IMG/VR virus record: IMGVR_UViG_3300042305_001773
Coordinates: 1-64,000 of that record
DNA: 64,000 nt
Strand: one strand, 5' to 3'
Below the pieces are notes generated by a model that worked only from the letters and a program-made list of their open reading frames with translations, was not told the origin of the DNA and searched no databases. A program made the translations under genes and the position numbers. The stretch's first letter is position 1. Each line of letters opens with the position of its first letter. Shown one piece after another: positions 1 through 43,759 of this stretch.

Positions 1-371
1 ATCACGTAGGTACGCAGCTCGTCGACGTCCTTCACAGCGCGGGGCGACACGATCCGGTCAAACATGACGCGGTAGCGCGGGCCACGGATGTAGAAGTTAA
101 TCGGGAGCGTCGCAAACGGGAGCGACACAGCCGCCGGGGAATCGGGCTCCTTGTCCACCACCTTGACGGGCTTGTCAGTGTCAACCTGACGGTCAAGCTC
201 GTCGTTGGTGATGGTCAGCGGCGGCATAATCCGCCGGTAGAACCCGTCTTCACGCATCTTGGTGCGCGTGAAGTCATTAACCGCGTCGATGGCCTGCTTC
301 TGCATGCCGGGGGTATCGAGCTGCTCAAAAAGCGTTTCGTTGAGCAGTTGGATCTCTTGCTGAGTGGGCAT
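1..371 (-). CDS. Major capsid protein, N-terminal part (runs off window)
   Basis: Manual translation MPTQQEIQLLNETLFEQLDTPGMQKQAIDAVNDFTRTKMREDGFYRRIMPP...; GGAGG RBS at 380-384; follows protease, scaffold-like and decoration-like genes. Confidence 0.7.
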   Translation of the reverse strand, partial: MPTQQEIQLLNETLFEQLDTPGMQKQAIDAVNDFTRTKMREDGFYRRIMPPLTITNDELDRQVDTDKPVKVVDKEPDSPAAVSLPFATLPINFYIRGPRYRVMFDRIVSPRAVKDVDELRTYV

Positions 372-411
372 TTTGGGAACCTCCATGTTCCTTATTTAGT
401 TAGGGATTAGA

Positions 412-2871: not shown

Positions 2872-4329
2872 TCATGTGACATAATTTTGCAATACACAGT
2901 GGTTTGCTGTCAACCAATTGTTTCCGTATTTCTCGCAGATGGCGGCGTAAGCAGCGATCTTATACAACGCGTAATGTTGCGCAAGAGCTGTTTCTGCTTT
3001 TCCACTCGCTTGCTTGTCGGACGGAAACTCAATTGCCCGGGCGTTACGAAGCGCAGCTAAGTATGCACGTTTCTCAACGCTGACGGGTAATACGCTATGT
3101 GTGTGGGCTACCTTTTCAGCCCACACGCGCACGCTTTGCGGCGCCGCATCAGCTGGAAAGTATACATTGTTTTCAAGCGTCGTGACGATATCTACGTCGT
3201 TAGCGAGCTTTGAAAACACGTTAGGCAGCGCATACGCAACTGCACTAACAAGTGTGGCGTTAGCTGACTTAACTGTCAACGCTAAAAAATCTCGCAGCGG
3301 CAAGATTACGCCAGCGTCGGCCAGTCCGCGTAACACCTCAGACATTTTAACAGAAGGGGTGTTATTTGTATCAATAGCCGGCTGTACTTCGCCGGAGCTG
3401 GCGAGCGCGGTCTGGGCCCAGTTACCGTTGGCGCCTGCATCCTTCTCCGCCTGCGCGAGCTGTGTTAACGCCTCTAACTGTGTCTGGACCCGCGCGGCGG
3501 GGGTACGGCCGAGGTCAAACCCAAGCGGCGCTGTAATACCCAGTTGCTCGGCTAACTCGGCGCCGGAAACGCAGCTACTTGAAGCGGCTTTTTGCAGTTG
3601 ACCAGATACATAGGCAATACGGTCGGCCGGGCGAAACACGTGGCTGATATCAAAAAACGTCGGATTCGGGTTATCGGCGTGTAGTACGTGGCCGTCTTCC
3701 AGCACCCGCCCCATGTTGTGCTTTAATCCGCCGGCCTTGCAGTGACCGCCGTTTTCAACCGAGTCGCAATATTCAGCGCGGGTCTTCGCCGTGTTGCCGC
3801 AAGATGAACACTTGTCGAACGGGATCTTGCAGGCCATCGACACGGCGATCTCTTTGTCGTTGGCCAGCTTTTCTAGTTCTTTGTCCGCGATCAACCCGCC
3901 GTTCCTGTCCGCGGCTTCTTTGGAGCCGTTTAGCGCCACGACTAACTCAATGCGTTTCATAGGTTCGTGATAGGCGCTGGCCTTTACGATACCGAAACTC
4001 TTAGCGGGGTTTTTGTTGGCGTGATCACGATAAAAGCGGGAGAATTTCTCAAACGTCTGGTGGTAGTTCCGGCAGCAGTCGCGCGTAAAACCGTCGCCGT
4101 TACGATTCGGGCCGTAGTCTTCCGTAGCGCCAATCGCGATCATGTGGACCGGTACTTCGTCTTTGGCAAACTTGATGTTTTCAAGCTTGTGCGCAAACTC
4201 GGCGCCGGCGCGTTTGACGAGGTCCTGCTTGTCGGCGCCGATAATACCGCGGCTAGATACTTTGATCAGCGCGGCAACGGGCTCGCTAAAATCCTGAGCG
4301 TGCGGCTGAATAACCTTGATCATGCTCAT
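2872..4329 (-). CDS. Putative prohead (capsid maturation) protease
   Basis: NRNGDGF, YRDHAN and VSMAC..DKCSSCG motifs (His/Ser catalytic candidates plus Zn ribbon); position upstream of scaffold and capsid. Confidence 0.65.
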   Translation of the reverse strand: MSMIKVIQPHAQDFSEPVAALIKVSSRGIIGADKQDLVKRAGAEFAHKLENIKFAKDEVPVHMIAIGATEDYGPNRNGDGFTRDCCRNYHQTFEKFSRFYRDHANKNPAKSFGIVKASAYHEPMKRIELVVALNGSKEAADRNGGLIADKELEKLANDKEIAVSMACKIPFDKCSSCGNTAKTRAEYCDSVENGGHCKAGGLKHNMGRVLEDGHVLHADNPNPTFFDISHVFRPADRIAYVSGQLQKAASSSCVSGAELAEQLGITAPLGFDLGRTPAARVQTQLEALTQLAQAEKDAGANGNWAQTALASSGEVQPAIDTNNTPSVKMSEVLRGLADAGVILPLRDFLALTVKSANATLVSAVAYALPNVFSKLANDVDIVTTLENNVYFPADAAPQSVRVWAEKVAHTHSVLPVSVEKRAYLAALRNARAIEFPSDKQASGKAETALAQHYALYKIAAYAAICEKYGNNWLTANHCVLQNYVT

Positions 4330-4331: not shown

Positions 4332-5315
4332 TTACTCTCCCGCGGACGAGCCGCCTAAACTGTTAAGAAGTGCCGGTACGCCAAGGGCGCCAAGAACTGG
4401 CAGGCCGATGCCAGCCAGCCGTCCACCAACTCGCGGCATACGACGAAAAGCCTGCTGTAGCTGCGCCGCTGTGAGCTTTTTGCCGGCGCCGCCAACGCCA
4501 GACTTACCCTCAGCCGCGATTGCGGCTAACACGTTAGCGACGTCATCAGCGTTGCGACCCAACGAGCCCCCGAGGAAATTACCGCGGGCCGCGCGTGTTG
4601 CTGTGTTGACGCGGCCGGGTACGGAAGCGGGCGTTGTCATACCAGCTGTTTCTAGCGGTAAACTGACGTCTCGCGGCACGTGGGCCGCCCCACGCAAACG
4701 ACGAATGCTGTTCAAAATTGTTTTTGTAAGCGACGGATCGTTTGTCGCTTCAGGCAGCTTGCCGATGTGTTTTGTCAGATTGTTTGTAATGCGCGTGGGA
4801 CCACTGTTTGCGCGCAACTGCTCAATAGTCGGCTTCAACTGTTTGGCAGTAGCGTCGCCGGAGTCAAGGAAACGGTCGAGTTTGCCGTACGCGTCTAGCG
4901 AGTTAGCGGCTTGGTGGCCGCCGTAAGCGCCAGCACCGGCACCAGCGAGATTTAACAGTGCGCCGGCGGACGAACCGTCTTGATTCTTAGCGGCAGCGAT
5001 AGCCGGCGGCGGTTCCGCGCCCGTCAGCAGCATGTTTTTTGCGGCTGTCGCGCCGAGACCGCCAATACCGCCCATCAGCGCATAATCAAGTATGGCGCGT
5101 CGTTTCTTCTTACCCTGTAGCGCACCGACGACGCCGCCAGCGCCAGCACCGATTGCAGCGTTCTGCAGATACGGGTTACTGAGAATCTGCGACAGGTCGG
5201 CCTGTTTGCCAAGAGCCGCCGCTACACTGGCCACCTTTTCGACCGCGGGGTCGGGTGTGCGGGTAGCAATTGCGGAAAGACCGCGAGCGAGTTCGTGTGT
5301 TTCGGTTGTTTTCAT
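4332..5315 (-). CDS. Gly-rich putative internal virion/ejection protein
   Basis: Glycine-zipper hydrophobic segments; EKVA and GKQA near N-terminus; no Cys seen. Confidence 0.45.
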   Translation of the reverse strand: MKTTETHELARGLSAIATRTPDPAVEKVASVAAALGKQADLSQILSNPYLQNAAIGAGAGGVVGALQGKKKRRAILDYALMGGIGGLGATAAKNMLLTGAEPPPAIAAAKNQDGSSAGALLNLAGAGAGAYGGHQAANSLDAYGKLDRFLDSGDATAKQLKPTIEQLRANSGPTRITNNLTKHIGKLPEATNDPSLTKTILNSIRRLRGAAHVPRDVSLPLETAGMTTPASVPGRVNTATRAARGNFLGGSLGRNADDVANVLAAIAAEGKSGVGGAGKKLTAAQLQQAFRRMPRVGGRLAGIGLPVLGALGVPALLNSLGGSSAGE

Positions 5316-8020: not shown

Positions 8021-10402
8021 TTACGCGTTAGCGATAGCGCCAAGATCAATATCCTGCGCGGCTTCTTCGGGATACGGCTCGATGGTCTTCTGCTTCAGGA
8101 AGAGGATAACGTCGCCAAGCATTTCAAACGCGTTGCGCAGCGAGTCTTCCAGTTCCGGCATGTCGGCTTTGCCGTAACGTTCGGCAAACCGGTCACCGTG
8201 CCAGTAGAACATAAACAAAATGCGGCCTAACTTATCGAGGCCCTTGGTGAGTTCGCCCATGTAACGATCGACAAGCGAGTCGTCACGTACAGCGCGCAAC
8301 ATAGCTCCTACCATCGCCGTGTCGAACACCTCGCGCTGGCCGCTCTGGGCGGCGTCGATTACGGAGCGCACGTCCTTTTGATCGAGCAGCGTGTTCGGGT
8401 TGTAAACGCTGCGGTCGGTCTGGCTAGCGCTCATACCCGGCACCTGCATCGCGGTATCAATACCGAGTTGCGTGGGGACGTTGGTGCCCATAATGCTTTC
8501 GCCGCCCATCACCGGGCCCGGATCTGTCGGCGCAGATGGCGCGCCGTTGATCATCATCGGGCCGCCGTACGGGTCGGCGTACTTAACTCGGCACTCAAAC
8601 TTGCGCTTGGCGGCCGCCTGTTTCAGGATCTCGCGCGCAGCATCTTCGCGCAACCCGTGGTGTTCCACTAGCGTAACGAGCGCTTTGATCGGGCTCAGGT
8701 TGGCTTCTTTGTTAATCGTTACCGACGAGCCGTTGTGATAAACCGTCAGCGCGGCGGTCTTCTGCATAAGAGCCAGCTGCGCGTCAACGAGGTTACCGGG
8801 CATCAGGGCCGGCGGATCGCTCTCGCCACAGCCGCAGGCGCCTTGATCTTCGGCGTTTTCGGCGTCGTCCTCACCTTTGGTGACCTTGAGCAGCTTGAAA
8901 CCCTCTGGTACATAGATGTCGCCCATGCTCGCGCGGAGGCTGGCACCCTTTTTGCCGTTGAGGTGAATCCGCACGCCGTCACGCCACTTGTCGTAGTTCA
9001 GCGGATCGGTGTAGCAGCAGGCGCCGATAGAGCCCTTCGGCGGATACTTTGAGTGATCTTCGAGATGCGCTTCGTAAACAGTGCTGCCGTTGCTGTCGCC
9101 GTACTCTTTGATCACGCGGAACGGCGCAGTAGTATCGCCGCGCTTGCTGAGCGCAATGTAACGAGCATCCTTGCTGGGGACGCTGTTGGCTTCCGGCAGG
9201 CTGTCAAACCACTTGTCGAACTCTTCGCCTTCGATACGGGCGAGAGCAAAAACTTGGTCAGCACGAGTGTTTAACCAGTTACGCGCGCCATCAACACGCA
9301 CAACAGTGATGAAGTTTTCACGCTTAGCGGCGCCTTGCGGATGCACGGCAACGTAACAACGCTCGATGTTGCCCGGTTTGACCAGAATCTCGTACAGGCC
9401 GCTTTCGGTGGGGTTAAACAGCTTCTTCTCGACCTGAATGTGATACGGAACGGATACGTTGTCGCGGTCACGCTGGTCTTGGATGAGCACACCGTCGCGC
9501 AGCAGCTTTTCCTGATCTTCTTCGCTGTGGCCGACCGGAGCTTTGGTCTGAATCGTGACGTCGTACGTGATAACCGTTAGGCCCTTAACAGACGCCGGCT
9601 CCTTGGGCGCTTCGGACAGCACGCTGGCAATCTTGGTGCTGGCGGCAACTTCGCGGGCGGCGGCGTCAGCAATAGCTTGCTTCACGATATCTAAACCGTG
9701 AAATTCTTCGATTGCGGCGGCCATCTGCGGCGCGTGCTTGCAGGAGTTAATAAGCGCGCCGATCATTTCTCGCCCGGCCTGCTTCAGAAACGTCTTCAGG
9801 TTTAGCGCGTCGCCCATTTCTTTGAATGCCTGCGCTGTGTTTAACGTGGCACTCTTGGCGAGAGCAGGCATCGCAGCCGTCATCATCTCTTTGAGCGTTG
9901 GCTGGGCAGAGCCGAACTTAGCCGGGCTGCGCGAAAGCTGCGTGAAATCCGGCTGGCGCTGGCCGAGACCCGCTAGATTGCGTTGTACGCCGCTACCCAG
10001 AATGTTGGGTTTGCGGTTGATCAGATAGTTAATCCAGTTTTCCTTGAGCGGCACGAACATGTCCTGATTTTTGATATACAGGAGTTCGTGACCCTTGAGG
10101 TCGCCGTTCAGGAAGAATACCGGCGCATACAGCCAGTTCGAGCCCACCTTGAACGCAAACACGCCGACCGCCTTGGTGTTTTCTCGGTTGCGGTCGAGGA
10201 GCTGAAAGCCAATTTCGTGGTCAAGCAGCTTAGGCGCCGAATCGCGCAGATAGGCGTGCGCCAGATTGCTAAACGACTGCTCGAAAGAGGTGTCGTCGCC
10301 TTTGCCGCCTAAATCGGCGTATTTGGTCTGGGTGCGGTCATACGACTGCATCACCTTCAGCCAATGCTTAACAGACGACTCTTTCGCTTTTTTGTTATAC
10401 AC
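8021..10402 (-). CDS. Large putative virion protein
   Basis: GTG start at 10402 after GGAGG; KYA, KSA, KQA, KIA and KTA motifs. Confidence 0.55.
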   Translation of the reverse strand: MYNKKAKESSVKHWLKVMQSYDRTQTKYADLGGKGDDTSFEQSFSNLAHAYLRDSAPKLLDHEIGFQLLDRNRENTKAVGVFAFKVGSNWLYAPVFFLNGDLKGHELLYIKNQDMFVPLKENWINYLINRKPNILGSGVQRNLAGLGQRQPDFTQLSRSPAKFGSAQPTLKEMMTAAMPALAKSATLNTAQAFKEMGDALNLKTFLKQAGREMIGALINSCKHAPQMAAAIEEFHGLDIVKQAIADAAAREVAASTKIASVLSEAPKEPASVKGLTVITYDVTIQTKAPVGHSEEDQEKLLRDGVLIQDQRDRDNVSVPYHIQVEKKLFNPTESGLYEILVKPGNIERCYVAVHPQGAAKRENFITVVRVDGARNWLNTRADQVFALARIEGEEFDKWFDSLPEANSVPSKDARYIALSKRGDTTAPFRVIKEYGDSNGSTVYEAHLEDHSKYPPKGSIGACCYTDPLNYDKWRDGVRIHLNGKKGASLRASMGDIYVPEGFKLLKVTKGEDDAENAEDQGACGCGESDPPALMPGNLVDAQLALMQKTAALTVYHNGSSVTINKEANLSPIKALVTLVEHHGLREDAAREILKQAAAKRKFECRVKYADPYGGPMMINGAPSAPTDPGPVMGGESIMGTNVPTQLGIDTAMQVPGMSASQTDRSVYNPNTLLDQKDVRSVIDAAQSGQREVFDTAMVGAMLRAVRDDSLVDRYMGELTKGLDKLGRILFMFYWHGDRFAERYGKADMPELEDSLRNAFEMLGDVILFLKQKTIEPYPEEAAQDIDLGAIANA

Positions 10403-10483
10403 GGCCAGCCTCCATGCTGCGCTCAAAATTAGACACAGCATTAATTTACTGCGTCGAAGTCCCTATATCCTACAAAAACAGGC

Positions 10484-12364
10484 TCACGGCTTCCACCCGC
10501 TTGTTGCGCCTGTTACACCGAATTGCTCGCCTTGGGCTAAAGCAGGCACATAACTGCTGCCCGCGGTATCGCTGCTTAAACCGCGCTGTACGCTGTTCAT
10601 AAGCCCCTTTTCTTGATACGAACCCAGCATGCGGGTCATCCAATCCGGGTCGTTTGAGATGTTTGCCATGCCGCGCACCATTTCGGGCTGGAACGGCGGC
10701 GGTTCTTTGTGGGCCTGAATTGTTTTTACGCCGTATTTGTTTAAGTTTGTCAGCACGTTTTTACCGATCTTTGTGCCAATTGAATAGTGCAGTACCGGCT
10801 TTTCGAGGTAATGCCCTGTTAAAGTGCTGGGCGCGGCCGATACACTTCCTTCGCGCGGCGTCCAATTACGCTCAATAGTCGAATACGGCACCACGTCATC
10901 TGGTACGTAATCACCGTACTCGTCGGTAAGGCGTACGTGATTTACAAGACCGCGCGCTAACAGCTCGATGTTGCGGCGATGGGCCGTAATACCGCTGTTA
11001 CCCATGACTTGCCGCATGGCCTGCACGAAGTAACGACGGCCTTCGCCTACGCCCTTGTGCCTGACAATTTCTGCCGGATTTGGCATACCCTCTGATATAA
11101 CGTCACCAGCTTCAAGCTCATCGCCCTTTTTGACCGAAAGATTTCTCTCTGTCGGAACATAGTGGTCCTGACCGTTAATCTGCACATAGTGGCCGCCCTG
11201 CGGAGCCGGACGAACTTCCTGTACCCGGCCGTCGAGCTGCGCGTGCACGGCGCCGTCTGGATATTTTTTCGGGACCTGTACAAGCGCGTTGAGCGCTTTA
11301 AAACCAGAAATCGCTCCTGCGCCGCCGACACCGCCAGAATGCTTCGAGCTGATCTGGCTTTGCGTGACTGGTTCCGACAGCGCTTGTGCTGCCGCGATAC
11401 CCACATAATCTCCAATAGGCGGTAAACGCCCTTTTTCCCTGTAACCGACGTCTTTCGCATAAACTCCACCGTCTCCCGGACCGCCGACAATCGGGCTGCG
11501 GACTAAGATATCTTTGGCGCCGCTTTCTTTCAGATCCCGCAGAATCTTTGGCGTCAGCATCGTATTGCGCTTGTACGGCCCGACGGCTCGCGCAAGAAAC
11601 GCGCCTTCGTTATCGGGATCGTCTACGTCGGTCGGGTAGCCGCGCTCTTCTGCCGCCATACGCCGTTCTTCGTCCGTGTCGTCATCATCGTCAGCTGTCA
11701 CAAGCAGGCGGTGCGTCATCTGCGCCAGTTGTTTACCGTAGAAACCGGCGTCAGCTGTAGCCGTCTTGAGGTCGATAACGCCTTTGCGTGTACCGAACGC
11801 GCCGGCGAAATACTCCACCGGGCGCAAACCTTGACTGTAGCCGCGCAGCACCGGAATTGGAATCGGGTCGCCGCGGTGGTCGAGATACTGCATGTCGGCG
11901 CCGAGGATTGAATTCAGCTGAAACTTATTACCGACACCCGACCCGGCAATCTGATGCGCTAAAGGGTTATCTTGGCCCTCAGCTTCCTTGTATACCTTGT
12001 CGAGCAGTTCTTGTTGCGCCGTCTGCGCCAATTCAAGCAGTTTGATATTGCGCTGTTTTTCGTCAAGCCGTTTGTCAGCAAAGATGTCGCGCATCTGACT
12101 CTGTACGCGCAGCTGAACATGCCGCGCGGCCAAAGTCGGCCGAATATCTTTTAACCCAAAAGACAGGCCGTTCGTTGTATATCCGGCGTCACGACCGATA
12201 TCGTGAAGTCGTTTCATAACTTCGCGATATTTTTCTGGGTGATTCTTCGCCAGATCGGTGGCGACGTTTGACATAGTTTTTTTGGTCAATACGCGATCGT
12301 AATCGCGCATCTCTGGCGGCAACGCTTCGTTAATCAGAAGTTGTCCGAGCGTTGTCTTCAGCAT
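10484..12364 (-). CDS. rpoC: RNA polymerase beta' C-terminal subunit
   Basis: Bridge helix (GTRKGVIDLKTATADAGFYGKQL), trigger loop (GIAAAQALSEPVTQSQISSKHSGG), HRRNIELL. Confidence 0.92.
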   Translation of the reverse strand: MLKTTLGQLLINEALPPEMRDYDRVLTKKTMSNVATDLAKNHPEKYREVMKRLHDIGRDAGYTTNGLSFGLKDIRPTLAARHVQLRVQSQMRDIFADKRLDEKQRNIKLLELAQTAQQELLDKVYKEAEGQDNPLAHQIAGSGVGNKFQLNSILGADMQYLDHRGDPIPIPVLRGYSQGLRPVEYFAGAFGTRKGVIDLKTATADAGFYGKQLAQMTHRLLVTADDDDDTDEERRMAAEERGYPTDVDDPDNEGAFLARAVGPYKRNTMLTPKILRDLKESGAKDILVRSPIVGGPGDGGVYAKDVGYREKGRLPPIGDYVGIAAAQALSEPVTQSQISSKHSGGVGGAGAISGFKALNALVQVPKKYPDGAVHAQLDGRVQEVRPAPQGGHYVQINGQDHYVPTERNLSVKKGDELEAGDVISEGMPNPAEIVRHKGVGEGRRYFVQAMRQVMGNSGITAHRRNIELLARGLVNHVRLTDEYGDYVPDDVVPYSTIERNWTPREGSVSAAPSTLTGHYLEKPVLHYSIGTKIGKNVLTNLNKYGVKTIQAHKEPPPFQPEMVRGMANISNDPDWMTRMLGSYQEKGLMNSVQRGLSSDTAGSSYVPALAQGEQFGVTGATSGWKP

Positions 12365-12365
12365 G

Positions 12366-12605
12366 TCACGGCGTCCACATTATTTTTTGCATCGACTTCG
12401 GTTGAAACTCTGACACAACAACCGTTTTGTCGACACCCAGTGCGCGCAGCAGCGAGTGAAATTCTTTTTCGCCGACTGTTGAATAAACAATGGCTTCGTC
12501 AACCTGAATAGCGACAAACAGCGGATTGCCGAGATCGTCTTCGACAATCACGCTGTGTGCTTTTTTTTCAGTCGGCTGCAGACTGTGTTGCGTTTTAACC
12601 AGCAT
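12366..12605 (-). CDS. Hypothetical protein
   Basis: 79 aa, tightly packed. Confidence 0.55.
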   Translation of the reverse strand: MLVKTQHSLQPTEKKAHSVIVEDDLGNPLFVAIQVDEAIVYSTVGEKEFHSLLRALGVDKTVVVSEFQPKSMQKIMWTP

Positions 12606-13323
12606 TGTCCGCTATGCTCCGAATCATGGCGGCGATAGCGTTTGCTTTGATCTGCATTTGCGTCGGCGCATTCGGATTGGAGTAGCCGGGGCCAAAGGGG
12701 CGCCCTATCGAAGAAGCCGACTTTTCGGGGCGGTCCCACCACGCGGCTTTCGACGGGTCGCCTTCCGGCGGCGCGGCATTCGGCGGCATCGGTCCGCCCG
12801 GAGGCATCGGGCCGCCGGGTGGTTGCATGCCACCTTGCGCGTTCGGGTCCTGCGGCGGCGGGGCCATCGGGCCGCCCGGAAGAGCTGTTTCGGCCGGTGG
12901 GGCGCCCGTCGTACCCGGCGGTAGCACCAACGACTCTGGCGGTACCTGAACGCCCATCGCGTTCATGATGGCCGTAAGCTGCTGCTGCATGTTGTACAGC
13001 CGATAATCGAGCATTTGCATCATCTGCTCCGGCTTGAGCTTTTGCTGCGCGCCGGCAGGAGCTGCGCCCGGAGCGGCGGGTGCGGCGGGCGCTGCGGGAG
13101 GTGCAGCGGGAGGCGCCATTCCCATAGCCGCAGGATCCGCTGGCGGTGCGGCTGCTGCAGCAACAGCAGACGGATCGGCCGGCGGCACAGCCCCCATGGC
13201 GGCTGGGTCAACCGGCGGAGCACCACCAGCAGCAGCGGGATCCACCGCCGCTCCGGGCACTAATGCGGATTTCTCAAAACGCGCCTTCGCCAGCGCAATA
13301 AGCTCGGGGTTTACCGTAAACAT
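12595..13323 (-). CDS. Pro/Ala-rich putative virion protein
   Basis: PADPAAMG-like repeats; EKSA twice; GGAGG RBS. Confidence 0.55.
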   Translation of the reverse strand: MFTVNPELIALAKARFEKSALVPGAAVDPAAAGGAPPVDPAAMGAVPPADPSAVAAAAAPPADPAAMGMAPPAAPPAAPAAPAAPGAAPAGAQQKLKPEQMMQMLDYRLYNMQQQLTAIMNAMGVQVPPESLVLPPGTTGAPPAETALPGGPMAPPPQDPNAQGGMQPPGGPMPPGGPMPPNAAPPEGDPSKAAWWDRPEKSASSIGRPFGPGYSNPNAPTQMQIKANAIAAMIRSIADNAG

Positions 13324-13343
13324 ACAACCTCCATGTTTAACAC

Positions 13344-16300
13344 TTACGTATTATCTTCCACAATATGCACCGGGGTGTCCACCTCTATTTCGCCGCGTCG
13401 GTATGCCTGTACGGCATCCTGCTTGCTACGAAACACGCGGGGTTTGGCTTTTTTACTGATCCGACTGGACGCCAAGTATAACCCAGTCTGGTAGTCTTTG
13501 TTCGGAACGTAGTGCGCGCGAAAGGTAGACGCAGCAAACAAATTTTTGCTCGGCAGCATCTTTTCAACGGCTTCTTTCGCGGCGTCTTCTGTACTTGGGA
13601 CGTGATACTGCATCGCGTCTCCGTCGAAGTCGGCGCCAAACCCCTTGGTGATCACGGGGTTTACTTCCATAACTTTGTTCTTCGTCAGCTTAGGGTAAAA
13701 CGCCATCATGCCGTAACGGTGTAAAACAGGCGCGCGATTAATAACAATCGGTCGCGACGACATCTGACGGTCAAGCTCGGCGAACGCTTCTTTATTCTTA
13801 TCTTCAACCGCCTGCATCGCCTGCATGCGCGGGAGGCCCCGACGGACGAGGCCGCGGACGACAAACGGTTTGTAAATGTCCCACGCTTTCTCTTCCGGTA
13901 GCGCAACCTCGTCCATATCCAGATCGGGGTTTGGTGTGATGACAGCGCGGCCGACGAGATCTACCGTCGAGCTAAGCAGTTTGCGCTGAACGGTGCCGTA
14001 CTTTGGCGAGTTACCGAACACGTGCCGCAGGAAACCTTTGACATTACGCTCGACGTTCTTGGGCTGCTGCGGCTCGCCTAACCCGGTAACAGCCTTCATT
14101 GAGTCGTACACACTTAGCCGCTCGTCGCCGTAATCAGTTAGCGCGCCAGATGCTTCTTTCAGCGTGTCGTTGGCGTCGAGCAGTTCTTTGTACAAATAGT
14201 TAGCATCAGCTACGAGCGGGAGCTTTTTACTTCCCATTGTGCTCACGGGACGGAAGAGCGGCGGCAAGACTGGTACTTTACTGATCATCCAGTCTTTAGG
14301 GTGCACGCCGGTTGTTTCAGCACTCTTCAAAAAACCCAGCCGGCGCACGGCAGCGTCGCGTAGCGTCTTGCGCCCGGACTTGATATCTAAACGAGCCTGC
14401 TCAATTGCCTTCGGTAAGTTAATTCTTTCGAGCGCGGCTTTGATCGCTGTCGGGCCGGTTTTATCGCCCAGCTGCTCTCGGCCGGCCAGCACACCGCGGA
14501 ACTGCTTCTCGGTCAGGCCAAGCACACGGCGAATCGGGTCTTCCATGACGGGGTTAGGCAGCGGCTCGTGCAACGTGATCTTGCTCCACCGATTACCGCC
14601 GTGACCGCCTGTTAATGTCTCGTCAAACAGCCCGCCTGCAATAGGCTTGAGCCGCCCTTTCCAGTCCACGGTCTCGGAACTCTTTAGCTCGCGCGCGCCT
14701 GCCAGCTCGTCGACGTCTTTGTCGGTCATCGCCATCAAGTTTGAGCGCGTACCCTTGCGCACAACGTTGATACCCGACGCCTTGAGTTGGGTGACAAACT
14801 TCTCGTAAACGTGCGGTACTTTAGGCAGCGGCGGCGTATATCCGGCCATGAACTGCGACCAGTATTCGGGGTTAGCTTGGCCGCGCACCATCTTGGCATC
14901 GCGAATAACCTTGCCGGCACCGTGTGACAGTAACGCGCCCAGATCCAACATGCCGATGCGCTTGGCGCCTTCGCTGCCACCTTTTGCTGGTGTACCTTCG
15001 GCGGTATACGCGCCCATCGACCGGCCTTGCGCCTTTGACTCGCTGGTGTGGTGCAACTTCATGAAGAACCGGTTGCCAGTGAGGACGCCGCCGATTTTAC
15101 GTCCAGTTTCTGGATCGATAACGTCTTCGGTATCTGACAGGCCGTGCGCTGCTAATTCTTTCTGCGCAAACTCAATCAGGTCGCGTTTGTTATCAAAGTC
15201 CTTGAGCTTGTACGGTTTGCCAGTCTTTGCCGCAACTTTACCCAGCGCAGCCTCGATAACTTGCGTCGGGTTAATGCGGCTGATCAGACCCAGCGGCGAG
15301 ACAAGAACTTCAAACGGGTTACCATCGCGATCCTTGGGCATCTGGTCGTCAGGTACGATCTCGGCAACGACGCCCTTATCACCGAAGCGCCCCGTGAGCT
15401 TATCGCCGACGTCCATGGGTGCTTGGTTCTTCACTACAACGCTCACACCCTTCTTGGTGTGCATAACGTCGGTCACGATACCGGGGGCATGATGCTCCCA
15501 CGTGATTGTCTCGTTGGTGAAGTTACCGGCACGCCCACGATGCACTTTGCCGTACACCGTGTCTTTCTTCTTTGCCACAAGCACAAGTGGATCACCAAAC
15601 TTAACCTCAGTGCCCTTTTTGATGGCGCCGTCGTCGTCAAAGTTGTCGAGATACTTTTTGTCGTACTCAGTCGGGAACAAACTCACGAACGCCTTCTTGC
15701 CAACGTGAGTGTTGTCGTCCCACTCGGCTTCGTGCTGATACATGTGCTCAGACGTCAGCCGCTTGGATGCAGATTCAGAAATAACTACCGCGTCTTCGTA
15801 GTTCTTGCCGCGAAACGGCAGATACGCCGTACGTAGATTAAGCCCTAGCGCGGCGCTGCCGTTTTGGTCAGTAAAGTTTGACCGCGCCAGCAGCTGTCCG
15901 GGTTCGACTGTGTCACCCGGTTTCACAAGCGGCGTCTGGTGTAAAAACGTTTTACGGTTGTACGGCATTTCGTTGTACAGATCGATCGTCTTCTTGTTAC
16001 CATCTTTGTCGCGCAGCACGATACCGTCAGGTGTCACGTCCACTACTTGTGCCCGCTCAGTAGCCCGTGTGGCGCCCAGCTTCTCGCCCATCTCGTCTTC
16101 GTGCGACACGCTTTCGTCGTCAGCCTTGGCAGACTGCAACAGCGGCGCCTCGGCGTTTACGAGCGGAAGCGCCTGCGTAAACATTCGGCTACCCATGATC
16201 ACGCGATGACCTTTGATCATGGATTTAATCGGCACCATGTTTGTGAGCGCCGAAAACGTCGTGTCCATGTTGGGCAGACTGAACTGCGCTTCTTTTTTCG

Positions 16301-17747
16301 GCACGTATTTCAGCTTGCCGTTTACGAGCGCGGCTACAACAGGCAGGTTGTTATCTTCTTCGCCCGGAAATACTAGCGGTGTGTCGGCCAGCTCTTGTGG
16401 TGTCTTGTACACCTTCTCGCCGGTTTTCATATCTATAACCGGCGTATACACCTTGCCGTCGGAGCCCTTCATGGCGCCGCGAGCAAACCGCATGTCGACA
16501 CCCACTTTTCCAGACTCGGGCGTGCGAAGGTAGTCGATAAACCCAAGGTGGCTGGGCTGCACAGAACGCGACTCAGCGGGCACGGCGTCGAGCGAACCGA
16601 TGCCGCCCTCACCCATGCGCGTTACACGGGTCTGGTGGTCAAAGATCTCAGCCGGGTTGATTTCTTCAAGACTCGACCCCAAACCGCTGCCAATAAGCGC
16701 AGCTGAGATTGCCTTGTCGAATACACCCGACGGAATGTGATCAATTGACTTCTTCGCCGTGGCTTTCCAGAGTAGCTTGTTAAGAGACTGCCGGTCTTTG
16801 GTAAACCGCTCGGCAATGAGGTCTTCCGGGCCGACGACGGACTGATACACCATGTTGTCTCGGTCGTCGCTCTCGGCCTCGCGGCGATTCACTGCGATTA
16901 ATTTCTTAGTGATCGCCAGAATCGTCTCCGGCGTCATGTTCTTGTATTCAGAACCCAGTGTGCGCCGGGTGACTTCCGGGTCGAGTTCGGTCTTGGCAAA
17001 CTCGGCCGCGATCGCCTGCGCTTTGGCAATGGCGTCTGCGCCCGCGACTGGTTTATTTACAAGCCGGGCGTAAATTTTATCCAGCGTACCCGCATCGCCC
17101 TTCTCCATGTTGACCGCGGTGATCTCGTTGCCCCATGCTTTGCGAATGTCCTGATCCGACACGCCCATAGATTTGAGCAGCGGCATGAGCGGGATCTGCG
17201 CCTGCCCGATGCTGATCTTAAACACGCCAGTCTTGGGGTCGAGGAAGTACCGGTGCGAGCGACCCTTACCCGGAAGCGTGTTTACATGCGCCTCGATTTC
17301 GCCGTTGTCTTTTTCGCGGGTAAACACGCCGGGACGCAACCGCATTTGGTGCGCAAGGGTGTACTCCACACCGCCGTTCACAAACGTGCCAGAGTCGGTG
17401 AGGTACGGCACGTGAGCGATCGTGGCGCGGCGCTGGCCTACAGGCTGGCCGGTTTTGTTATCTGTAAGCGTCCACGTACCTTGCAATCGCCGGGCGAGTG
17501 TCCCTCTAGAAAGGACAGCTTTCTTTTGATCTGCCCTCGTGAAACGTTCAGGTCCTGTGTACCCGACGTCTTGAAGCTGCAGCGTATACAGGTCGTTCTG
17601 CAGCGGCTTGAGACTCTGCGCGCTGTTCAGCGCCTGATTGAAAATGTTATCGCGCATCATGCCAACATCGCCGAATGTGCGCATTGTGGGCGCAACGGGC
17701 GCGGGCATCATCGACGACTTTAGCTCGGGCAGCTCGGGGGCTGGCAT
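13344..17747 (-). CDS. rpoB: RNA polymerase beta fused to beta' N-terminal half
   Basis: beta motifs RTPESGKVG, NYEDAVVIS, GDKLTGRFGDKGVV, MKLHH; beta' motifs VPVLPPLFRP, NRAPVLHR and catalytic GADFDGDAM. Confidence 0.95.
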   Translation of the reverse strand: MPAPELPELKSSMMPAPVAPTMRTFGDVGMMRDNIFNQALNSAQSLKPLQNDLYTLQLQDVGYTGPERFTRADQKKAVLSRGTLARRLQGTWTLTDNKTGQPVGQRRATIAHVPYLTDSGTFVNGGVEYTLAHQMRLRPGVFTREKDNGEIEAHVNTLPGKGRSHRYFLDPKTGVFKISIGQAQIPLMPLLKSMGVSDQDIRKAWGNEITAVNMEKGDAGTLDKIYARLVNKPVAGADAIAKAQAIAAEFAKTELDPEVTRRTLGSEYKNMTPETILAITKKLIAVNRREAESDDRDNMVYQSVVGPEDLIAERFTKDRQSLNKLLWKATAKKSIDHIPSGVFDKAISAALIGSGLGSSLEEINPAEIFDHQTRVTRMGEGGIGSLDAVPAESRSVQPSHLGFIDYLRTPESGKVGVDMRFARGAMKGSDGKVYTPVIDMKTGEKVYKTPQELADTPLVFPGEEDNNLPVVAALVNGKLKYVPKKEAQFSLPNMDTTFSALTNMVPIKSMIKGHRVIMGSRMFTQALPLVNAEAPLLQSAKADDESVSHEDEMGEKLGATRATERAQVVDVTPDGIVLRDKDGNKKTIDLYNEMPYNRKTFLHQTPLVKPGDTVEPGQLLARSNFTDQNGSAALGLNLRTAYLPFRGKNYEDAVVISESASKRLTSEHMYQHEAEWDDNTHVGKKAFVSLFPTEYDKKYLDNFDDDGAIKKGTEVKFGDPLVLVAKKKDTVYGKVHRGRAGNFTNETITWEHHAPGIVTDVMHTKKGVSVVVKNQAPMDVGDKLTGRFGDKGVVAEIVPDDQMPKDRDGNPFEVLVSPLGLISRINPTQVIEAALGKVAAKTGKPYKLKDFDNKRDLIEFAQKELAAHGLSDTEDVIDPETGRKIGGVLTGNRFFMKLHHTSESKAQGRSMGAYTAEGTPAKGGSEGAKRIGMLDLGALLSHGAGKVIRDAKMVRGQANPEYWSQFMAGYTPPLPKVPHVYEKFVTQLKASGINVVRKGTRSNLMAMTDKDVDELAGARELKSSETVDWKGRLKPIAGGLFDETLTGGHGGNRWSKITLHEPLPNPVMEDPIRRVLGLTEKQFRGVLAGREQLGDKTGPTAIKAALERINLPKAIEQARLDIKSGRKTLRDAAVRRLGFLKSAETTGVHPKDWMISKVPVLPPLFRPVSTMGSKKLPLVADANYLYKELLDANDTLKEASGALTDYGDERLSVYDSMKAVTGLGEPQQPKNVERNVKGFLRHVFGNSPKYGTVQRKLLSSTVDLVGRAVITPNPDLDMDEVALPEEKAWDIYKPFVVRGLVRRGLPRMQAMQAVEDKNKEAFAELDRQMSSRPIVINRAPVLHRYGMMAFYPKLTKNKVMEVNPVITKGFGADFDGDAMQYHVPSTEDAAKEAVEKMLPSKNLFAASTFRAHYVPNKDYQTGLYLASSRISKKAKPRVFRSKQDAVQAYRRGEIEVDTPVHIVEDNT

Positions 17748-17750: not shown

Positions 17751-18611
17751 TCACCCCGCCTGCGATTGCTCAACTTGCTTCTTCAACGCGATGATTTCGT
17801 CGGGGTCTACGTATGTCGGCAAAATACCGGAAATACGGGCCTTCGACTTCGCGGCCTCTTCGACTGCCTTTGCGCGAGAACGCTCGCGAGCGCGGTCATA
17901 CATGAGTTTTGCTGCCAACCCGCCCAAACCGAGCCCAGCTCCGACGTACGCGCCGCCAACAGTAGCCGGCACACGCTTTGCAACGTCGTACGCGCCGGTA
18001 ATCCAATCGAGCAGCGCTGTTTTTTCTGCCGCCGCTTTTTCACTGGCGGTATCGTAAACACTGTCGAGCTGCTTGGCGCCGCCGCCGGTCAGCGCGTCGT
18101 AATATTCTTTTTCGGCTTCGGCAATGGCTGCTTGCTGGTCGCGGCGTTTCTTCCGTTTGTGCATCGCGTCGATCAGTTTGTAACCGCCGTACAGTCCCAG
18201 CGCGCCAGCGCCAACAGTCGCGCCGGTTCCAAACGACGACCGAATCACGTTAGGGTCGTACGAGTTTGGTTTCTTCGGGGCCGCGTCGGGTGTAAACGGG
18301 CGCAAAAAGCTCAAGACAGAATCGGGCAGCGCTTTACCAACGCCTTCCGCCACGGTGTCGTACATCCCGGCGGCTTTCGTTTCAGTAACCTTTGGCAGCT
18401 CTTCCTCGTCTTCTTCTTTGTACTTTGGCTGGTTTAACGCCTGAGACAGCCCGCGGGCCAGATAATAAAGACTAGCGGCGCCAGCACCAAGACCAAGCCC
18501 GCCAAGGCCAGTACGCATAATACGATCGCCCCAAAAACGCTGGTAGTCTTGGGCGGTAGGTTTGCCAACAGGGGCAGCGGGTGGGATGGCATTGTTTGCT
18601 AGTTTTTCCAT
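17751..18611 (-). CDS. Gly-rich putative ejection/membrane protein
   Basis: Three Gly-rich hydrophobic segments; MEKLA, TKAA, EKAA and EKTA motifs. Confidence 0.5.
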   Translation of the reverse strand: MEKLANNAIPPAAPVGKPTAQDYQRFWGDRIMRTGLGGLGLGAGAASLYYLARGLSQALNQPKYKEEDEEELPKVTETKAAGMYDTVAEGVGKALPDSVLSFLRPFTPDAAPKKPNSYDPNVIRSSFGTGATVGAGALGLYGGYKLIDAMHKRKKRRDQQAAIAEAEKEYYDALTGGGAKQLDSVYDTASEKAAAEKTALLDWITGAYDVAKRVPATVGGAYVGAGLGLGGLAAKLMYDRARERSRAKAVEEAAKSKARISGILPTYVDPDEIIALKKQVEQSQAG

Positions 18612-18623: not shown

Positions 18624-18971
18624 CTAGTGTTTGGGCGGGATCATGCCATAAACCTGTGCCCACTCAAGCCAGACACGAAAATGCTTATGCTCGTCGTCCC
18701 AGTTGTCGGTTCTTTTTAATAGCCGATACCAGCCGTTGACTATCTTATCATTTATGTCATCAAATTCTGATTTTTGCGCCGGATCCCACAGTTCAAACAT
18801 GTGCGATTTAAAGTCATACTGGATATCAATGTTTTCCAGTTCATCTTGCTTTAAATCTGGCCGTTGACCGCTTCCCAGCACCGGAAACCCGTCGAGTGTT
18901 CCGGGCCAGTTTAACTGGGCGTTGTTGTGCTGCGGACCGCCAATTTCGCCGTGATATTTTCGCAGGCTCAC
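18624..18971 (-). CDS. Hypothetical protein
   Basis: 115 aa operonic ORF. Confidence 0.55.
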   Translation of the reverse strand: MSLRKYHGEIGGPQHNNAQLNWPGTLDGFPVLGSGQRPDLKQDELENIDIQYDFKSHMFELWDPAQKSEFDDINDKIVNGWYRLLKRTDNWDDEHKHFRVWLEWAQVYGMIPPKH

Positions 18972-27325: not shown

Positions 27326-27339
27326 AGCGCGCTTTCAAA

Positions 27340-27411
27340 CTGCCTGAGTAGGACTCGAACCTACAACCCCAGCATTAACAGTGCCGTGCACTACCATTGT
27401 GCTATCAGGCA
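27340..27411 (-). tRNA. tRNA-Asn(GUU)
   Basis: Cloverleaf; TGCCTGA/TCAGGCA acceptor; CTGTTAA anticodon loop; GTTCGAG T-loop; CCA not encoded. Confidence 0.92.
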
Positions 27412-30977: not shown

Positions 30978-31051
30978 ACACTGAATCCGTTCAGTGCTGG
31001 TTTTCAGCCAAATCCGTTTGGCTGCCGATAACTTACATCACCGGACTGCGG

Positions 31052-43511: not shown

Positions 43512-43513
43512 GC

Positions 43514-43759
43514 TCAGTTCACCATGAGATTGCGCGCAGTTTGATACATCGCCCACAGCCCCAAGCCGGCGGACACCAAGCCCAGATATTTAAACGACGT
43601 GTACACCGTGACAAAGAAGTAAATGCCGAGCCAACACGCCAACGCACCCGTCACAACTGCGGCGATTATCCATTTTTTCACCGCAAACAATGCGGCGATT
43701 GGCCCGCACAGCAGCACGGCGCACACGATGAAAAAGACCAGTAACGCCAGACTTTCCAT
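43514..43759 (-). CDS. Membrane protein
   Basis: Three TM segments. Confidence 0.6.
   Translation of the reverse strand: MESLALLVFFIVCAVLLCGPIAALFAVKKWIIAAVVTGALACWLGIYFFVTVYTSFKYLGLVSAGLGLWAMYQTARNLMVN

What the first reader, a model, noticed from the sequence alone, without database searches (positions are those of the whole stretch)
10484..17747. Cysteine-free, zinc-less multisubunit RNA polymerase inside the virion gene block: candidate injected RNAP
Seen: by manual scan neither subunit (1467 + 626 aa) contains a Cys. The beta' N-terminal Zn finger is deleted (GGLFDETLTGGHGGNRWSKITL where bacteria have GLFC...CxC...CxxC...RMGHIEL). The second Zn site is substituted (VRSPIVGGPGDGGVYAKDVG versus RS...C......C..CYG). 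The conserved beta C of GR(I/V)CPIETPE is D (GFIDYLRTPE). The genes lie among head proteins. Established: the N4 virion RNAP, which is injected across the envelope, lacks Cys. Inference: this enzyme is packaged and threaded through the periplasm, which selects against Cys and Zn sites.
Basis: partly seen in the sequence, partly recalled or inferred. Interest (0 to 1): 0.9.

Follow-up and report, generated by a model that had tools for sequence, protein, structure and literature searches.

The report
Cysteine-free phage RNA polymerase in head module
A ~205 kb uncultured phage encodes a bacterial-type two-gene RNA polymerase with no cysteine and neither of the usual zinc sites. It lies among head genes, and its closest cultured relative carries the same enzyme inside the virus particle, so it is most likely delivered into the host with the DNA.

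Summary
The genes at 13344-17747 (beta fused to the N-terminal half of beta', 1467 aa) and 10484-12364 (C-terminal half of beta', 626 aa) contain no Cys. About 29 are expected at the window's own rate (P ~2e-13). The beta' N-terminal zinc ribbon is deleted and all four ligands of the second zinc site are gone, while the catalytic motifs are intact.

This is a lineage trait. Across 150 homologues at 44-60% identity, mature polymerase sequence has 0.06% Cys. Inteins inserted in the same genes have 2.2%, so the cause is selection on the mature protein, not mutation bias. More distant relatives keep exactly four Cys, the second zinc site. Its loss is a single derived event in this window's clade.

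Packaging is supported indirectly:
- In Salmonella phage Arash (32% identical, same architecture), published virion mass spectrometry finds both subunits, a sigma factor and an SNF2 helicase abundantly.
- The window's genes lie about 10 kb upstream of the major capsid gene.
- The window's SNF2 helicase is also purged of Cys.

The "periplasm" cause is plausible and already published for N4-like phages. "Selection against zinc sites" is only partly right, because virion-proven Arash keeps one.

Verdict: a new variant of a known kind. Interest 0.6.

The parts
13344..17747 (-). RNAP large subunit, 1467 aa: full beta (aa ~1-1000) fused to the N-terminal half of beta' (aa ~1030-1467). It has 0 Cys.
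   Evidence: Pfam Rpb2_6 at 172.5 bits (aa 584-915) and Rpb1_2 at 87 bits. BLASTP to E. coli RpoB 420-1337 and RpoC 160-540. Cys count.
10484..12364 (-). RNAP small subunit, 626 aa: the C-terminal half of beta' with bridge helix and trigger loop. It has 0 Cys.
   Evidence: Pfam Rpb1_5 at 85.6 bits. Alignment to E. coli RpoC 723-1286. Cys count.
14571..14636 (-). Site of the deleted beta' N-terminal zinc ribbon (GGLFDETLTGGHGGNRWSKITL, fusion aa 1038-1059).
   Evidence: The same deletion is present in Arash gp206.
11444..11503 (-). Substituted second zinc site (VRSPIVGGPGDGGVYAKDVG, beta'C aa 288-307). The fourth ligand, about 55 aa upstream, is replaced by an acidic DDDDD run.
   Evidence: The Cys-less version is conserved in all 65 relatives of at least 48% identity.
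16515..16544 (-). Beta motif GFIDYLRTPE, where E. coli has GRVCPIETPE (C559 becomes D). This is also the commonest intein insertion point in relatives.
13617..13637 (-). Catalytic Mg-binding motif GADFDGD (fusion aa 1371-1377), intact.
12595..13323 (-). 242-aa Ala/Pro-rich low-complexity protein lying between the two RNAP genes. It has 0 Cys and its role is unknown.
   Evidence: Sequence and composition. Present in 51 related loci with 0.10% Cys.
12366..12605 (-). 79-aa protein between the RNAP genes. It has 0 Cys and its role is unknown.
   Evidence: No Pfam hit.
17751..18611 (-). 286-aa Cys-free protein with Gly-rich hydrophobic segments, immediately upstream of the RNAP gene. Candidate internal or ejection protein (inference).
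   Evidence: (35 loci, 0.05% Cys).
18624..18971 (-). 115-aa Cys-free protein upstream of the RNAP block. Role unknown.
8021..10441 (-). 806-aa protein directly downstream of beta'C, a distant homologue of Arash virion protein gp218. It contains 8 Cys, so it is not purged.
   Evidence: tblastn to Arash gp218. Adjacent to beta'C in 31-37 divergent loci. Arash MS gives 36 unique peptides. The AF2 model has pTM 0.35 and no fold match.
2872..4329 (-). 485-aa homologue of Arash virion protein gp222, with 10 Cys.
   Evidence: 35% identity, E = 4e-30. Detected in the Arash virion MS.
6..383 (-). N-terminal ~126 aa of the major capsid protein. The gene runs off the contig and window start.
   Evidence: tblastn with Arash gp226 (annotated major capsid protein): 42% identity, E = 1e-20. 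Translation.
41322..43556 (-). 744-aa SNF2-family helicase, homologue of the virion-detected Arash gp217. It is Cys-purged and is the probable transcription partner of the RNAP.
   Evidence: Pfam SNF2-rel_dom and Helicase_C. 33% identity to Arash gp217, E = 2e-69. 12 of 14 homologues have 0 Cys. Arash MS gives 38 unique peptides.

Best explanation
The two genes encode the catalytic core of a phage bacterial-type multisubunit RNA polymerase. Beta is fused to the N-terminal half of beta', and the C-terminal half of beta' is a separate chain.

The enzyme belongs to a large, mostly uncultured superfamily. Its cultured members are Salmonella phage Arash and Vibrio phages D69, D148 and D181.

Proposed mechanism:
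- Shown for Arash, inferred here: the enzyme is expressed late from the head-gene block and built into the capsid, probably together with an SNF2 helicase and a phage sigma-like factor.
- Inferred: it is expelled into the cell with the DNA and transcribes the first phage genes without host RNA polymerase.

The protein has been purged of cysteine by long-term selection on the mature polypeptide. The whole superfamily retains Cys only at the four ligands of the second zinc site. In this window's clade even that site was replaced once, by a conserved GGPxDGG(V/L)(Y/F) loop plus an acidic run. The result is an RNAP with no cysteine and no canonical zinc site that keeps all catalytic motifs.

Why Cys is selected against is not shown. 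Candidate causes are disulfide-forming enzymes in the periplasm, oxidation during extracellular storage, and a need to unfold and refold without metal during ejection.
For: Identity as RNAP:
- Pfam domains far above threshold.
- 25-30% identity to E. coli RpoB/RpoC over most of the length.
- Intact GADFDGD, the beta Lys motif GDKLTGRFGDKGV, bridge helix and trigger-loop bases.

Cys purge is real and selected:
- 0/2093 aa, P ~2e-13.
- 109 of 120 close homologues have 0 Cys.
- In 150 representatives at 44-60% identity, exteins have 0.059% Cys (129/218,332). The 253 insertions of 80 aa or more in the same ORFs have 2.2% (1894/86,081). Pfam intein domains were confirmed in two sampled proteins, and a Cys-start, Asn-end, Ser +1 junction was read directly in a third.
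- The residue after the insertion is Ser or Thr in 156 cases and Cys in 1.
- 63 Zn2-retaining relatives have 42 non-Zn2 Cys in 112,412 aligned residues (0.037%). Neighbouring ORFs have 1.08%.
- The Zn2-less sequences form one clade of 52 with 100% SH-aLRT support. Its neighbours keep Zn2.

Packaging:
- Arash virion MS gives unique-peptide counts of 128 (gp206), 40 (gp216), 38 (helicase gp217), 36 (gp218), 24 (sigma gp10) and 32 (portal) (PMC10585845).
- The capsid gene lies about 10 kb downstream in the same orientation, with homologues of Arash virion proteins in between.
- A portal homologue lies within 9 kb of beta'C in 23 divergent loci.
- The window's SNF2 helicase is also Cys-purged.

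Parallels:
- N4 gp50/gp51/gp52 have 0 Cys.
- Schitoviridae ejection proteins show the same purge (PMC11445570).
- phiKZ virion RNAP has half the Cys density of its non-virion paralogue and, unlike it, lacks the Zn ribbon (PMC7824862).
Against: - There is no virion proteome or infection data for the window's own clade. Arash is only 24-33% identical.
- The Arash preparation (sucrose gradient) yielded 116 proteins, including ribonucleotide reductase and primase. Detection alone is therefore weak, although those proteins had only 2-11 unique peptides.
- No portal, terminase or sigma factor was recognised in the 64 kb window.
- The conserved neighbours homologous to Arash virion proteins (806 aa and 485 aa) are not Cys-depleted.
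- In Arash the capsid and tail-tube proteins are also Cys-free. Cys content therefore does not cleanly separate ejected proteins from shell proteins.
- phiKZ virion RNAP has 16 Cys, so Cys-freeness is not required for injection.
Confidence: 0.7

Rival explanations
1. The polymerase is made and used only inside the infected cell, like the phiKZ non-virion enzyme. Its Cys- and Zn-free state serves something else, for example insensitivity to oxidative stress or zinc starvation during infection, or escape from a host factor that targets the zinc domains.
For: There is no direct virion evidence for this clade. Arash appears to have only one msRNAP set (one place per record, and the annotation). 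The same enzyme must therefore also work in the cytoplasm later in infection. The Arash MS list also contains evident cytoplasmic enzymes.
Against: - Arash gp206 and gp216 rank among the five most-detected virion proteins by spectrum count, and gp206 has 128 unique peptides. The cytoplasmic carry-over proteins have only 2-11.
- The genes are embedded in the head module and co-oriented with it across the superfamily.
- Replication and metabolic proteins of the same window have normal or high Cys.
- The non-virion RNAP of phiKZ keeps its zinc ribbon and has 1.16% Cys.
Confidence: 0.15
2. The enzyme is packaged and ejected, but periplasmic disulfide enzymes do not drive the Cys purge. The drivers would be long extracellular storage at high protein and DNA density, where thiols oxidise or cross-link, or the need to pass unfolded through the tail and refold without cofactors.
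For: In Arash the non-ejected capsid (gp226) and tail-tube (gp227) proteins are also Cys-free. The N4 capsid protein has 0 Cys. The purge is therefore wider than the ejected set. One zinc site survives in virion-proven Arash, which fits poorly with a strict thiol-in-periplasm rule.
Against: - Other virion proteins keep Cys: the window's 806-aa and 485-aa proteins, the Arash portal (4 Cys) and gp8 (9 Cys), and the N4 sheath (11 Cys).
- The tightest purge is in proteins known or suspected to leave the capsid (N4 gp50-52).
Confidence: 0.3
3. The lack of Cys is a by-product of base composition, codon usage or chance, not of selection on the protein.
For: None was found. This was considered because the window is 55-60% G+C and several neighbouring proteins are also Cys-free.
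Against: - TGY triplets are common out of frame in the same genes.
- Inteins within homologous ORFs carry 2.2% Cys against 0.06% in the exteins.
- Neighbouring genes reach 5-7% Cys.
- The pattern holds over sequences as little as 23-30% identical.
Confidence: 0.01

Closest known systems
Salmonella phage Arash gp206 + gp216 (OQ632216), and Vibrio phages D69, D148 and D181
   Same: The architecture is the same: beta fused to beta'N (1525-1527 aa) plus a separate beta'C (606-609 aa). Identity is 32% over 96% of the fusion. The N-terminal zinc ribbon is deleted in the same way. Outside the zinc site they are almost Cys-free, with 1-2 Cys in the fusion. The genes sit in the head module next to gp218-like, gp222-like and capsid genes, and an SNF2 helicase partner is present.
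   Different: Arash and D69 keep all four ligands of the second zinc site, while the window's clade has none. In Arash the portal gene sits just upstream of the fusion and the helicase just downstream of beta'C. In the window no portal was recognised and the helicase is 30 kb away. The genomes differ in size, about 181-187 kb against 205 kb.
phiKZ-type (Chimalliviridae) virion RNAP: gp178, gp149, gp180, gp80
   Same: It is a multisubunit, bacterial-type RNAP whose genes are annotated as head proteins. It lacks the beta' N-terminal zinc ribbon that the non-virion paralogue keeps, and it has a lower Cys density than that paralogue (0.61% against 1.16%; PMC7824862). An SNF2-type helicase co-occurs with the RNAP genes.
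   Different: The phiKZ enzyme is split into at least four chains rather than a beta-beta'N fusion, still has 16 Cys, and is paired with a second, non-virion RNAP. It is far more divergent from bacterial RpoB/RpoC. No Chimalliviridae appear among the 30 hits listed, out of 62 matching records.
N4 gp50 and the Schitoviridae ejection operon
   Same: It is a virion-packaged RNAP ejected into a Gram-negative host, has zero Cys in 3500 aa and is flanked by Cys-free ejection proteins. The link between Cys suppression and the periplasm is already published (PMC11445570).
   Different: N4 gp50 is a single-subunit, T7-like polymerase that is unrelated in sequence and fold, and it comes from a podovirus. 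This is an analogy of life-style, not homology.
Bacterial RpoB/RpoC (E. coli K-12)
   Same: All Pfam core domains are present, along with the catalytic Asp triad, the beta Lys motif, the bridge helix and the trigger loop.
   Different: Both beta' zinc sites are absent, there is no Cys at all (E. coli has 22), and beta is fused to half of beta'. No alpha or omega genes were recognised nearby. Several rifampicin-pocket residues differ: Q513S, F514S, D516E, S531T and L533M by alignment.
mReC phages (Weinheimer & Aylward 2020, PMC7481178)
   Same: They are uncultured large tailed phages from aquatic metagenomes that encode bacterial-like beta and beta' subunits.
   Different: In the supplementary table rows sampled, most mReC contigs have unfused beta (roughly 1050-1270 aa) and full-length beta' (roughly 1290-1430 aa) genes lying tens of kb apart, and their capsids match PF07068. 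The window has a beta-beta'N fusion plus beta'C. Whether the two sets overlap was not resolved.

Membership tests
Two-barrel multisubunit RNA polymerase (bacterial beta/beta' type) | Beta catalytic barrel with the conserved Lys motif | tested here: met
   Pfam Rpb2_6 at 172.5 bits. GDKLTGRFGDKGV aligns to E. coli GDKMAGRHGNKGV.
Two-barrel multisubunit RNA polymerase (bacterial beta/beta' type) | Beta' catalytic barrel with the (N)ADFDGD Mg site | tested here: met
   GADFDGD at fusion aa 1371-1377. Pfam Rpb1_2 at 87 bits.
Two-barrel multisubunit RNA polymerase (bacterial beta/beta' type) | Bridge helix and trigger loop region of beta' | tested here: met
   Pfam Rpb1_5 at 85.6 bits. Alignment to E. 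coli beta' 763-945.
Two-barrel multisubunit RNA polymerase (bacterial beta/beta' type) | Two structural zinc sites in beta' (N-terminal ribbon and the C814/C888/C895/C898 site) | tested here: not met
   The ribbon is deleted and all four ligands of the second site are absent. There is no Cys in either chain. Metal content was not measured.
Two-barrel multisubunit RNA polymerase (bacterial beta/beta' type) | Alpha dimer and omega assembly subunits | tested here: inconclusive
   No Pfam or PHROG hit to alpha or omega among the neighbours scanned. The small Cys-free ORFs (79, 115 and 242 aa) remain unassigned.
Virion-packaged (injected) phage RNA polymerases | Protein present in purified virions | not testable with these tools
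   Shown only for the homologues in Arash (128 and 40 unique peptides; PMC10585845).
Virion-packaged (injected) phage RNA polymerases | Gene located in, and co-oriented with, the structural (late) module | tested here: met
   The capsid gene N-terminus is at 6-353(-). gp218- and gp222-like genes lie between it and the RNAP genes. Portal and gp218 linkage holds in divergent loci.
Virion-packaged (injected) phage RNA polymerases | Early transcription independent of host RNAP and of new protein synthesis | not testable with these tools
   This needs infection experiments.
Virion-packaged (injected) phage RNA polymerases | Cys suppression, as described for Schitoviridae ejection proteins | tested here: met
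   0/2093 aa here and 0.04-0.06% across the superfamily.
Arash-like beta-beta'N fusion RNAP superfamily (not formally named) | Beta fused to beta'N, with beta'C separate or fused as well; full-length homology to Arash gp206 and gp216 | tested here: met
   (96% coverage), and the tree.
Chimalliviridae (phiKZ-like) virion RNAP | Beta and beta' each split into separate small chains, paired with a non-virion RNAP | tested here: not met
   The subunit architecture differs. No second RNAP is present in the window, and Arash shows one RNAP locus.
mReC lineage | Separate full-length beta and beta' genes; gp23-type capsid (PF07068) | tested here: not met
   The architecture differs from most rows sampled in the mReC supplementary table. 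The capsid family was not tested, because only 126 aa of the gene lie in the window.

The most novel reading that the evidence does not exclude
This clade has a fully cysteine-free, zinc-independent bacterial-type RNA polymerase. It is packaged as a ready holoenzyme (core, sigma-like factor and SNF2 helicase) and is the phage's only RNAP, serving both as the injected early enzyme and as the later enzyme. If so, the two 'universal' beta' zinc sites are dispensable for folding and catalysis. It would also mean that 'Cys only where chemically indispensable' is a sequence-only signature for proteins that phages inject. In this window that signature would also flag the SNF2 helicase, a 612-aa NUDIX-domain protein and several glycine-zipper proteins.
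Probability: 0.35. Interest if true: 0.8.

Novelty: new variant of a known kind. Interest (0 to 1): 0.6.

Why it matters
Multisubunit RNA polymerases are generally described as having structural zinc sites in the largest subunit. Here a large natural clade has replaced both and removed every cysteine while keeping the catalytic core. That gives a natural test of what the zinc sites are for, and a possible redox-insensitive, metal-independent RNAP scaffold.

The contrast between inteins and exteins within the same genes is an unusually clean demonstration that selection acts on the mature protein. It extends the "ejected proteins avoid cysteine" rule from the single-subunit N4 enzyme to a bacterial-type enzyme of more than 2000 residues. 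It also suggests a cheap sequence criterion for predicting virion-delivered proteins in uncultured jumbo phages.

The finding also defines a widespread phage lineage, with hundreds of metagenomic contigs, whose early transcription is probably independent of the host. That bears on host takeover and on resistance to defences that act before phage genes are expressed.

Tried and rejected
- **HMM annotation of neighbours.** PHROGs and Pfam scans of about 45 window proteins gave almost nothing for the genes around the RNAP. The head-module context had to come from tblastn against Arash.
- **DNA search.** Megablast of 22 kb against the phage collection found no match.
- **The 806-aa conserved neighbour.** A profile search against PDB sequences gave no hit. 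The AlphaFold2 model from a 37-sequence alignment was mediocre (pLDDT 65.7, pTM 0.35), and Foldseek against PDB gave nothing below E = 0.2. Its function stays unknown.
- **'Moraphage' paper (PMC12619734).** This is a different lineage without RNAP. PaBG-type phages are also irrelevant, because they have a sigma factor only.
- **mReC membership.** Rejected as the default label, because the subunit architecture differs.
- **Composition or mutational bias.** Rejected as the cause of Cys loss.
- **AR9 comparison.** I started comparing AR9 virion and non-virion RNAP, which would test a Gram-positive host with no periplasm. I stopped because the virion subunit genes are interrupted by introns and the table gives only their outer coordinates. 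It is listed as a next step.
- **Rifampicin sensitivity.** It cannot be predicted. H526 and R529 are conserved, while Q513, F514, D516, S531 and L533 are substituted.
- **Promoter and terminator scan of 1-20 kb.** Sigma-70-like promoters were below random expectation (4 against 7.9 +/- 2.7) and terminators were at chance level. This is compatible with a long late operon read from non-host promoters, but it proves nothing.

Full report
**1. What is at the coordinates**

The span 10484-17747 holds four minus-strand ORFs:
- 13344-17747, 1467 aa
- 12595-13323, 242 aa
- 12366-12605, 79 aa
- 10484-12364, 626 aa

Pfam places RNA_pol_Rpb2_6 (172.5 bits), Rpb2_3 and Rpb2_2 in residues 143-915 of the large protein. 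Rpb1_1 and Rpb1_2 (87 bits) fall in residues 1127-1395. The 626-aa protein has Rpb1_5 (85.6 bits).

BLASTP to E. coli K-12 gives these correspondences:
- RpoB 420-1337 matches fusion residues 271-995.
- RpoC 160-540 matches fusion residues 1078-1452.
- RpoC 723-1286 matches the small protein.

The enzyme is therefore beta fused to the N-terminal half of beta', plus a separate C-terminal half of beta'. The catalytic elements are intact:
- GADFDGD at aa 1371-1377
- the beta lysine motif GDKLTGRFGDKGV
- the bridge helix and the trigger-loop bases

**2. The observation**

Both chains have zero Cys. The other ORFs of the window hold 1.38% Cys, so 28.9 would be expected (P = 2.4e-13). At the E. coli RpoB+RpoC rate 16.8 would be expected (P = 5e-8).

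TGY triplets are absent in frame but number 74+57 and 29+19 in the other two frames of the two genes. The DNA does not avoid them; the protein does.

All three quoted motifs are present exactly where stated. In alignment:
- The beta' N-terminal zinc ribbon is replaced by about ten residues.
- The second zinc site (E. coli C814, C888, C895, C898) becomes deletion/G/Y/D.
- Beta C559 is Asp.

"Zinc-less" is an inference from the missing ligands.

**3. It is a lineage trait, and selection is on the mature protein**

The word-indexed search found 1449 homologues. Of the best 120 (76-100% identical), 109 have no Cys. The ~1800-aa versions carry 11-15 Cys, nearly all inside one ~350-aa insertion.

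The exhaustive representative search returned 150 cluster representatives at 44-60% identity, and 126 of them carry one to six large insertions. The evidence that these are inteins:
- Intein_splicing, LAGLIDADG, Hint or homing-endonuclease domains were confirmed in the two sampled proteins that gave Pfam hits.
- Two other sampled proteins gave no intein hit in Pfam. In one of them the junction was read directly as RTPE|C...GN|S.

After global alignment, exteins hold 129 Cys in 218,332 residues (0.059%). The 253 insertions hold 1894 Cys in 86,081 residues (2.2%). Insertions mostly begin with Cys and end with Asn. The following residue is Ser (109) or Thr (47), and Cys only once. The spliced product therefore stays Cys-free.

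The same genes thus carry a 37-fold Cys contrast between the part that is removed and the part that functions. This rules out mutational or compositional explanations.

**4. The zinc story across the superfamily**

Arash gp216 and Vibrio phage D69 0264 each have exactly four Cys (232, 284, 291, 294). These align with the E. coli second zinc site. Their fusion proteins have only 1-2 Cys and lack the N-terminal ribbon.

A profile-guided scan of IMG/VR returned 80 loci at 23-99% identity to Arash. Findings from those loci:
- In 63 loci that keep the site, there are 252 zinc-site Cys. Only 42 other Cys occur in 112,412 aligned polymerase residues (0.037%). Other ORFs of 200 aa or more in the same loci have 1.08%.
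- Some lineages encode beta plus the whole of beta' as one ~2000-2100-aa chain with four Cys in total.
- All 65 relatives of the window at 48% identity or more have the Cys-less VRSPxVGGPxDGG(V/L)(Y/F) version, with an acidic run where the first ligand was.

In a maximum-likelihood tree of 115 beta'C sequences, the zinc-site-less sequences form one clade of 52 (SH-aLRT 100). Its nearest neighbours (L073, L114, L117, L111) keep the site.

The order of events is as follows. The N-terminal ribbon and all non-ligand Cys were lost early in the superfamily. The last zinc site was lost once, in the window's clade.

**5. Is it a virion enzyme?**

Direct evidence exists only for Arash. In sucrose-gradient-purified particles (PMC10585845):

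| Protein | Unique peptides | Spectra |
|---|---|---|
| gp206 (fusion) | 128 | 3516 |
| gp216 (beta'C) | 40 | 1210 |
| gp217 (SNF2 helicase) | 38 | 1148 |
| gp218 | 36 | 1149 |
| gp10 (sigma factor) | 24 | 467 |
| portal | 32 | 877 |

gp206 is the most-detected protein. Obviously cytoplasmic enzymes in the same list have 2-11 unique peptides. The second sigma factor, gp196, is not listed.

Dividing the published spectra by protein length gives 1.9-2.4 for gp206, gp216, gp217, gp218 and gp10, and 1.5 for the portal. This is my arithmetic on the published numbers. It hints at a roughly equimolar packaged complex.

In the window:
- The capsid protein N-terminus (42% identical to Arash gp226, E = 1e-20) lies at 6-353(-).
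- Between it and beta'C lie homologues of Arash virion proteins gp218 (806 aa) and gp222 (485 aa). This mirrors the Arash order gp216-gp218-gp222-gp226.
- Gene spacing in the block is tight and all genes run the same way.
- Sigma-70-like promoters are not enriched.

A portal homologue lies within 9 kb of beta'C in 23 divergent loci, and a gp218-like gene is adjacent in 31-37.

The window's SNF2 helicase (41322-43556; Pfam; 33% identical to gp217) is also Cys-purged. Of 14 homologues, 12 have none.

Immediately around the polymerase genes are further conserved Cys-free proteins. Among them are Gly-rich hydrophobic proteins and a 242-aa Ala/Pro-rich protein. These are plausible internal or ejection proteins. 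That is inference only.

**6. Comparators for the causal claim**

- N4 gp50 (3500 aa), gp51 and gp52 have no Cys. N4 replication proteins have 1.1-1.4%.
- The DEV paper reports the same for 191 Schitoviridae and cites the periplasm hypothesis (PMC11445570).
- In phiKZ the virion enzyme has 16 Cys in 2614 aa (0.61%) and no CxC...CxxC in gp180. The non-virion enzyme has 33 in 2850 aa (1.16%) and keeps that motif in gp55. This agrees with Iyer et al. (PMC7824862).

The direction of the effect is therefore reproducible in three independent virion polymerases, but several observations limit the conclusion:
- Complete Cys loss is not obligatory for injection.
- One zinc site is compatible with packaging.
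- Some non-ejected virion proteins are Cys-free too (Arash gp226 and gp227).
- Some virion proteins are not, such as the window's 806-aa and 485-aa proteins.

The data do not separate periplasmic disulfide formation from oxidation in storage or from unfolding and refolding.

**7. Comparison with the known**

The enzyme is a member of the two-barrel RNAP family by every catalytic criterion, but fails the zinc-site criterion. It belongs with Arash, D69 and hundreds of metagenomic contigs in an unnamed superfamily.

It is not the phiKZ type, which has a different split, a second RNAP and much greater divergence. It does not match the architecture listed for mReC contigs. It works like N4 gp50 without being related to it.

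The literature searches found no description of a Cys-free or zinc-site-free multisubunit RNAP, nor of the superfamily-wide purge. The Arash paper notes the virion detection and suggests early transcription.

**8. Verdict**

Packaging is likely (about 0.7). The stated cause is unproven, and the claim about zinc sites is overstated. This is a new variant of a known kind, with moderate to high interest.

Noticed in passing
Relatives P0121-P0270; insertion points correspond to window fusion aa ~411, 599, 784, 825, 903-925, 1245-1250 and 1375-1380: The polymerase gene is an intein hotspot in relatives: 253 large insertions in 150 representatives, up to six per protein. Several sit inside catalytic motifs (after RTPE, inside GDKL, inside ADFDGD). 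The window's own allele has none. Representatives may over-sample long alleles.
   Followed up: partly
L110, L112, L113, L115, L116, L118, L120, L124 and others: Distant relatives encode beta plus the complete beta' as a single ~2000-2100-aa polypeptide containing only four Cys, the second zinc site.
   Followed up: partly
window 46807, 47594(-), 50745, 52212(-), 53868, 54258, 55204; also 9686 and 14382 inside genes: The motif GATAKCTAAA occurs 9 times against 0.07 expected. The intergenic copies share cGCTGATAKCTAAAaaa followed within ~10 nt by a GC-rich hairpin. It is a candidate phage-specific promoter or terminator element, possibly read by this RNAP.
   Followed up: partly
window 59467-62102 and 27339-27412: Five tRNA genes (two Leu, Glu, Val, Lys) cluster with a phage-encoded tmRNA (tag GTFNSVPALAA). 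A lone tRNA-Asn lies at 27339.
   Followed up: no
window 40034-41344, 4332-5315, 17751-18611, 36929-38286: Several Cys-free proteins carry glycine-zipper (GxxxG) runs. The 436-aa protein has an uninterrupted zipper over aa ~333-385. They are possible membrane-inserting ejection proteins.
   Followed up: partly
window 25487-27325: A 612-aa Cys-free protein with a NUDIX domain (PHROG MutT/NUDIX, E = 1.5e-9). By the Cys criterion it is another candidate packaged enzyme.
   Followed up: no
window 12595-13323: The ORF between the two polymerase genes is 43% Ala+Pro, with short tandem GGPMPP-type repeats (direct repeat family D17). It is conserved in 51 loci.
   Followed up: partly
Arash virion MS table (PMC10585845): Length-normalised spectral counts of gp206, gp216, SNF2 helicase gp217, gp218 and sigma gp10 all fall at 1.9-2.4 per residue, suggesting a stoichiometric packaged complex. 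The packaged sigma gp10 has 0 Cys. The undetected sigma gp196 has 3.
   Followed up: partly
window 43767-44615: A trypsin-family serine protease (Pfam Trypsin, E = 2e-20) with an N-terminal hydrophobic segment lies next to the SNF2 helicase. Its role (prohead processing or a secreted function) is unknown.
   Followed up: no
window 31033-33823, 36768-36935, 60185-61388: Several small proteins are very Cys-rich (5-13% Cys). They lie near ferritin-like, methyltransferase and 2OG-Fe(II) oxygenase genes and show that the phage does not lack Cys in general.
   Followed up: no
window 1: The window is the first 64 kb of IMG/VR contig IMGVR_UViG_3300042305_001773 (205,044 bp). The capsid gene is cut by the contig end, which suggests a circularly permuted or terminally redundant genome.
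   Followed up: partly
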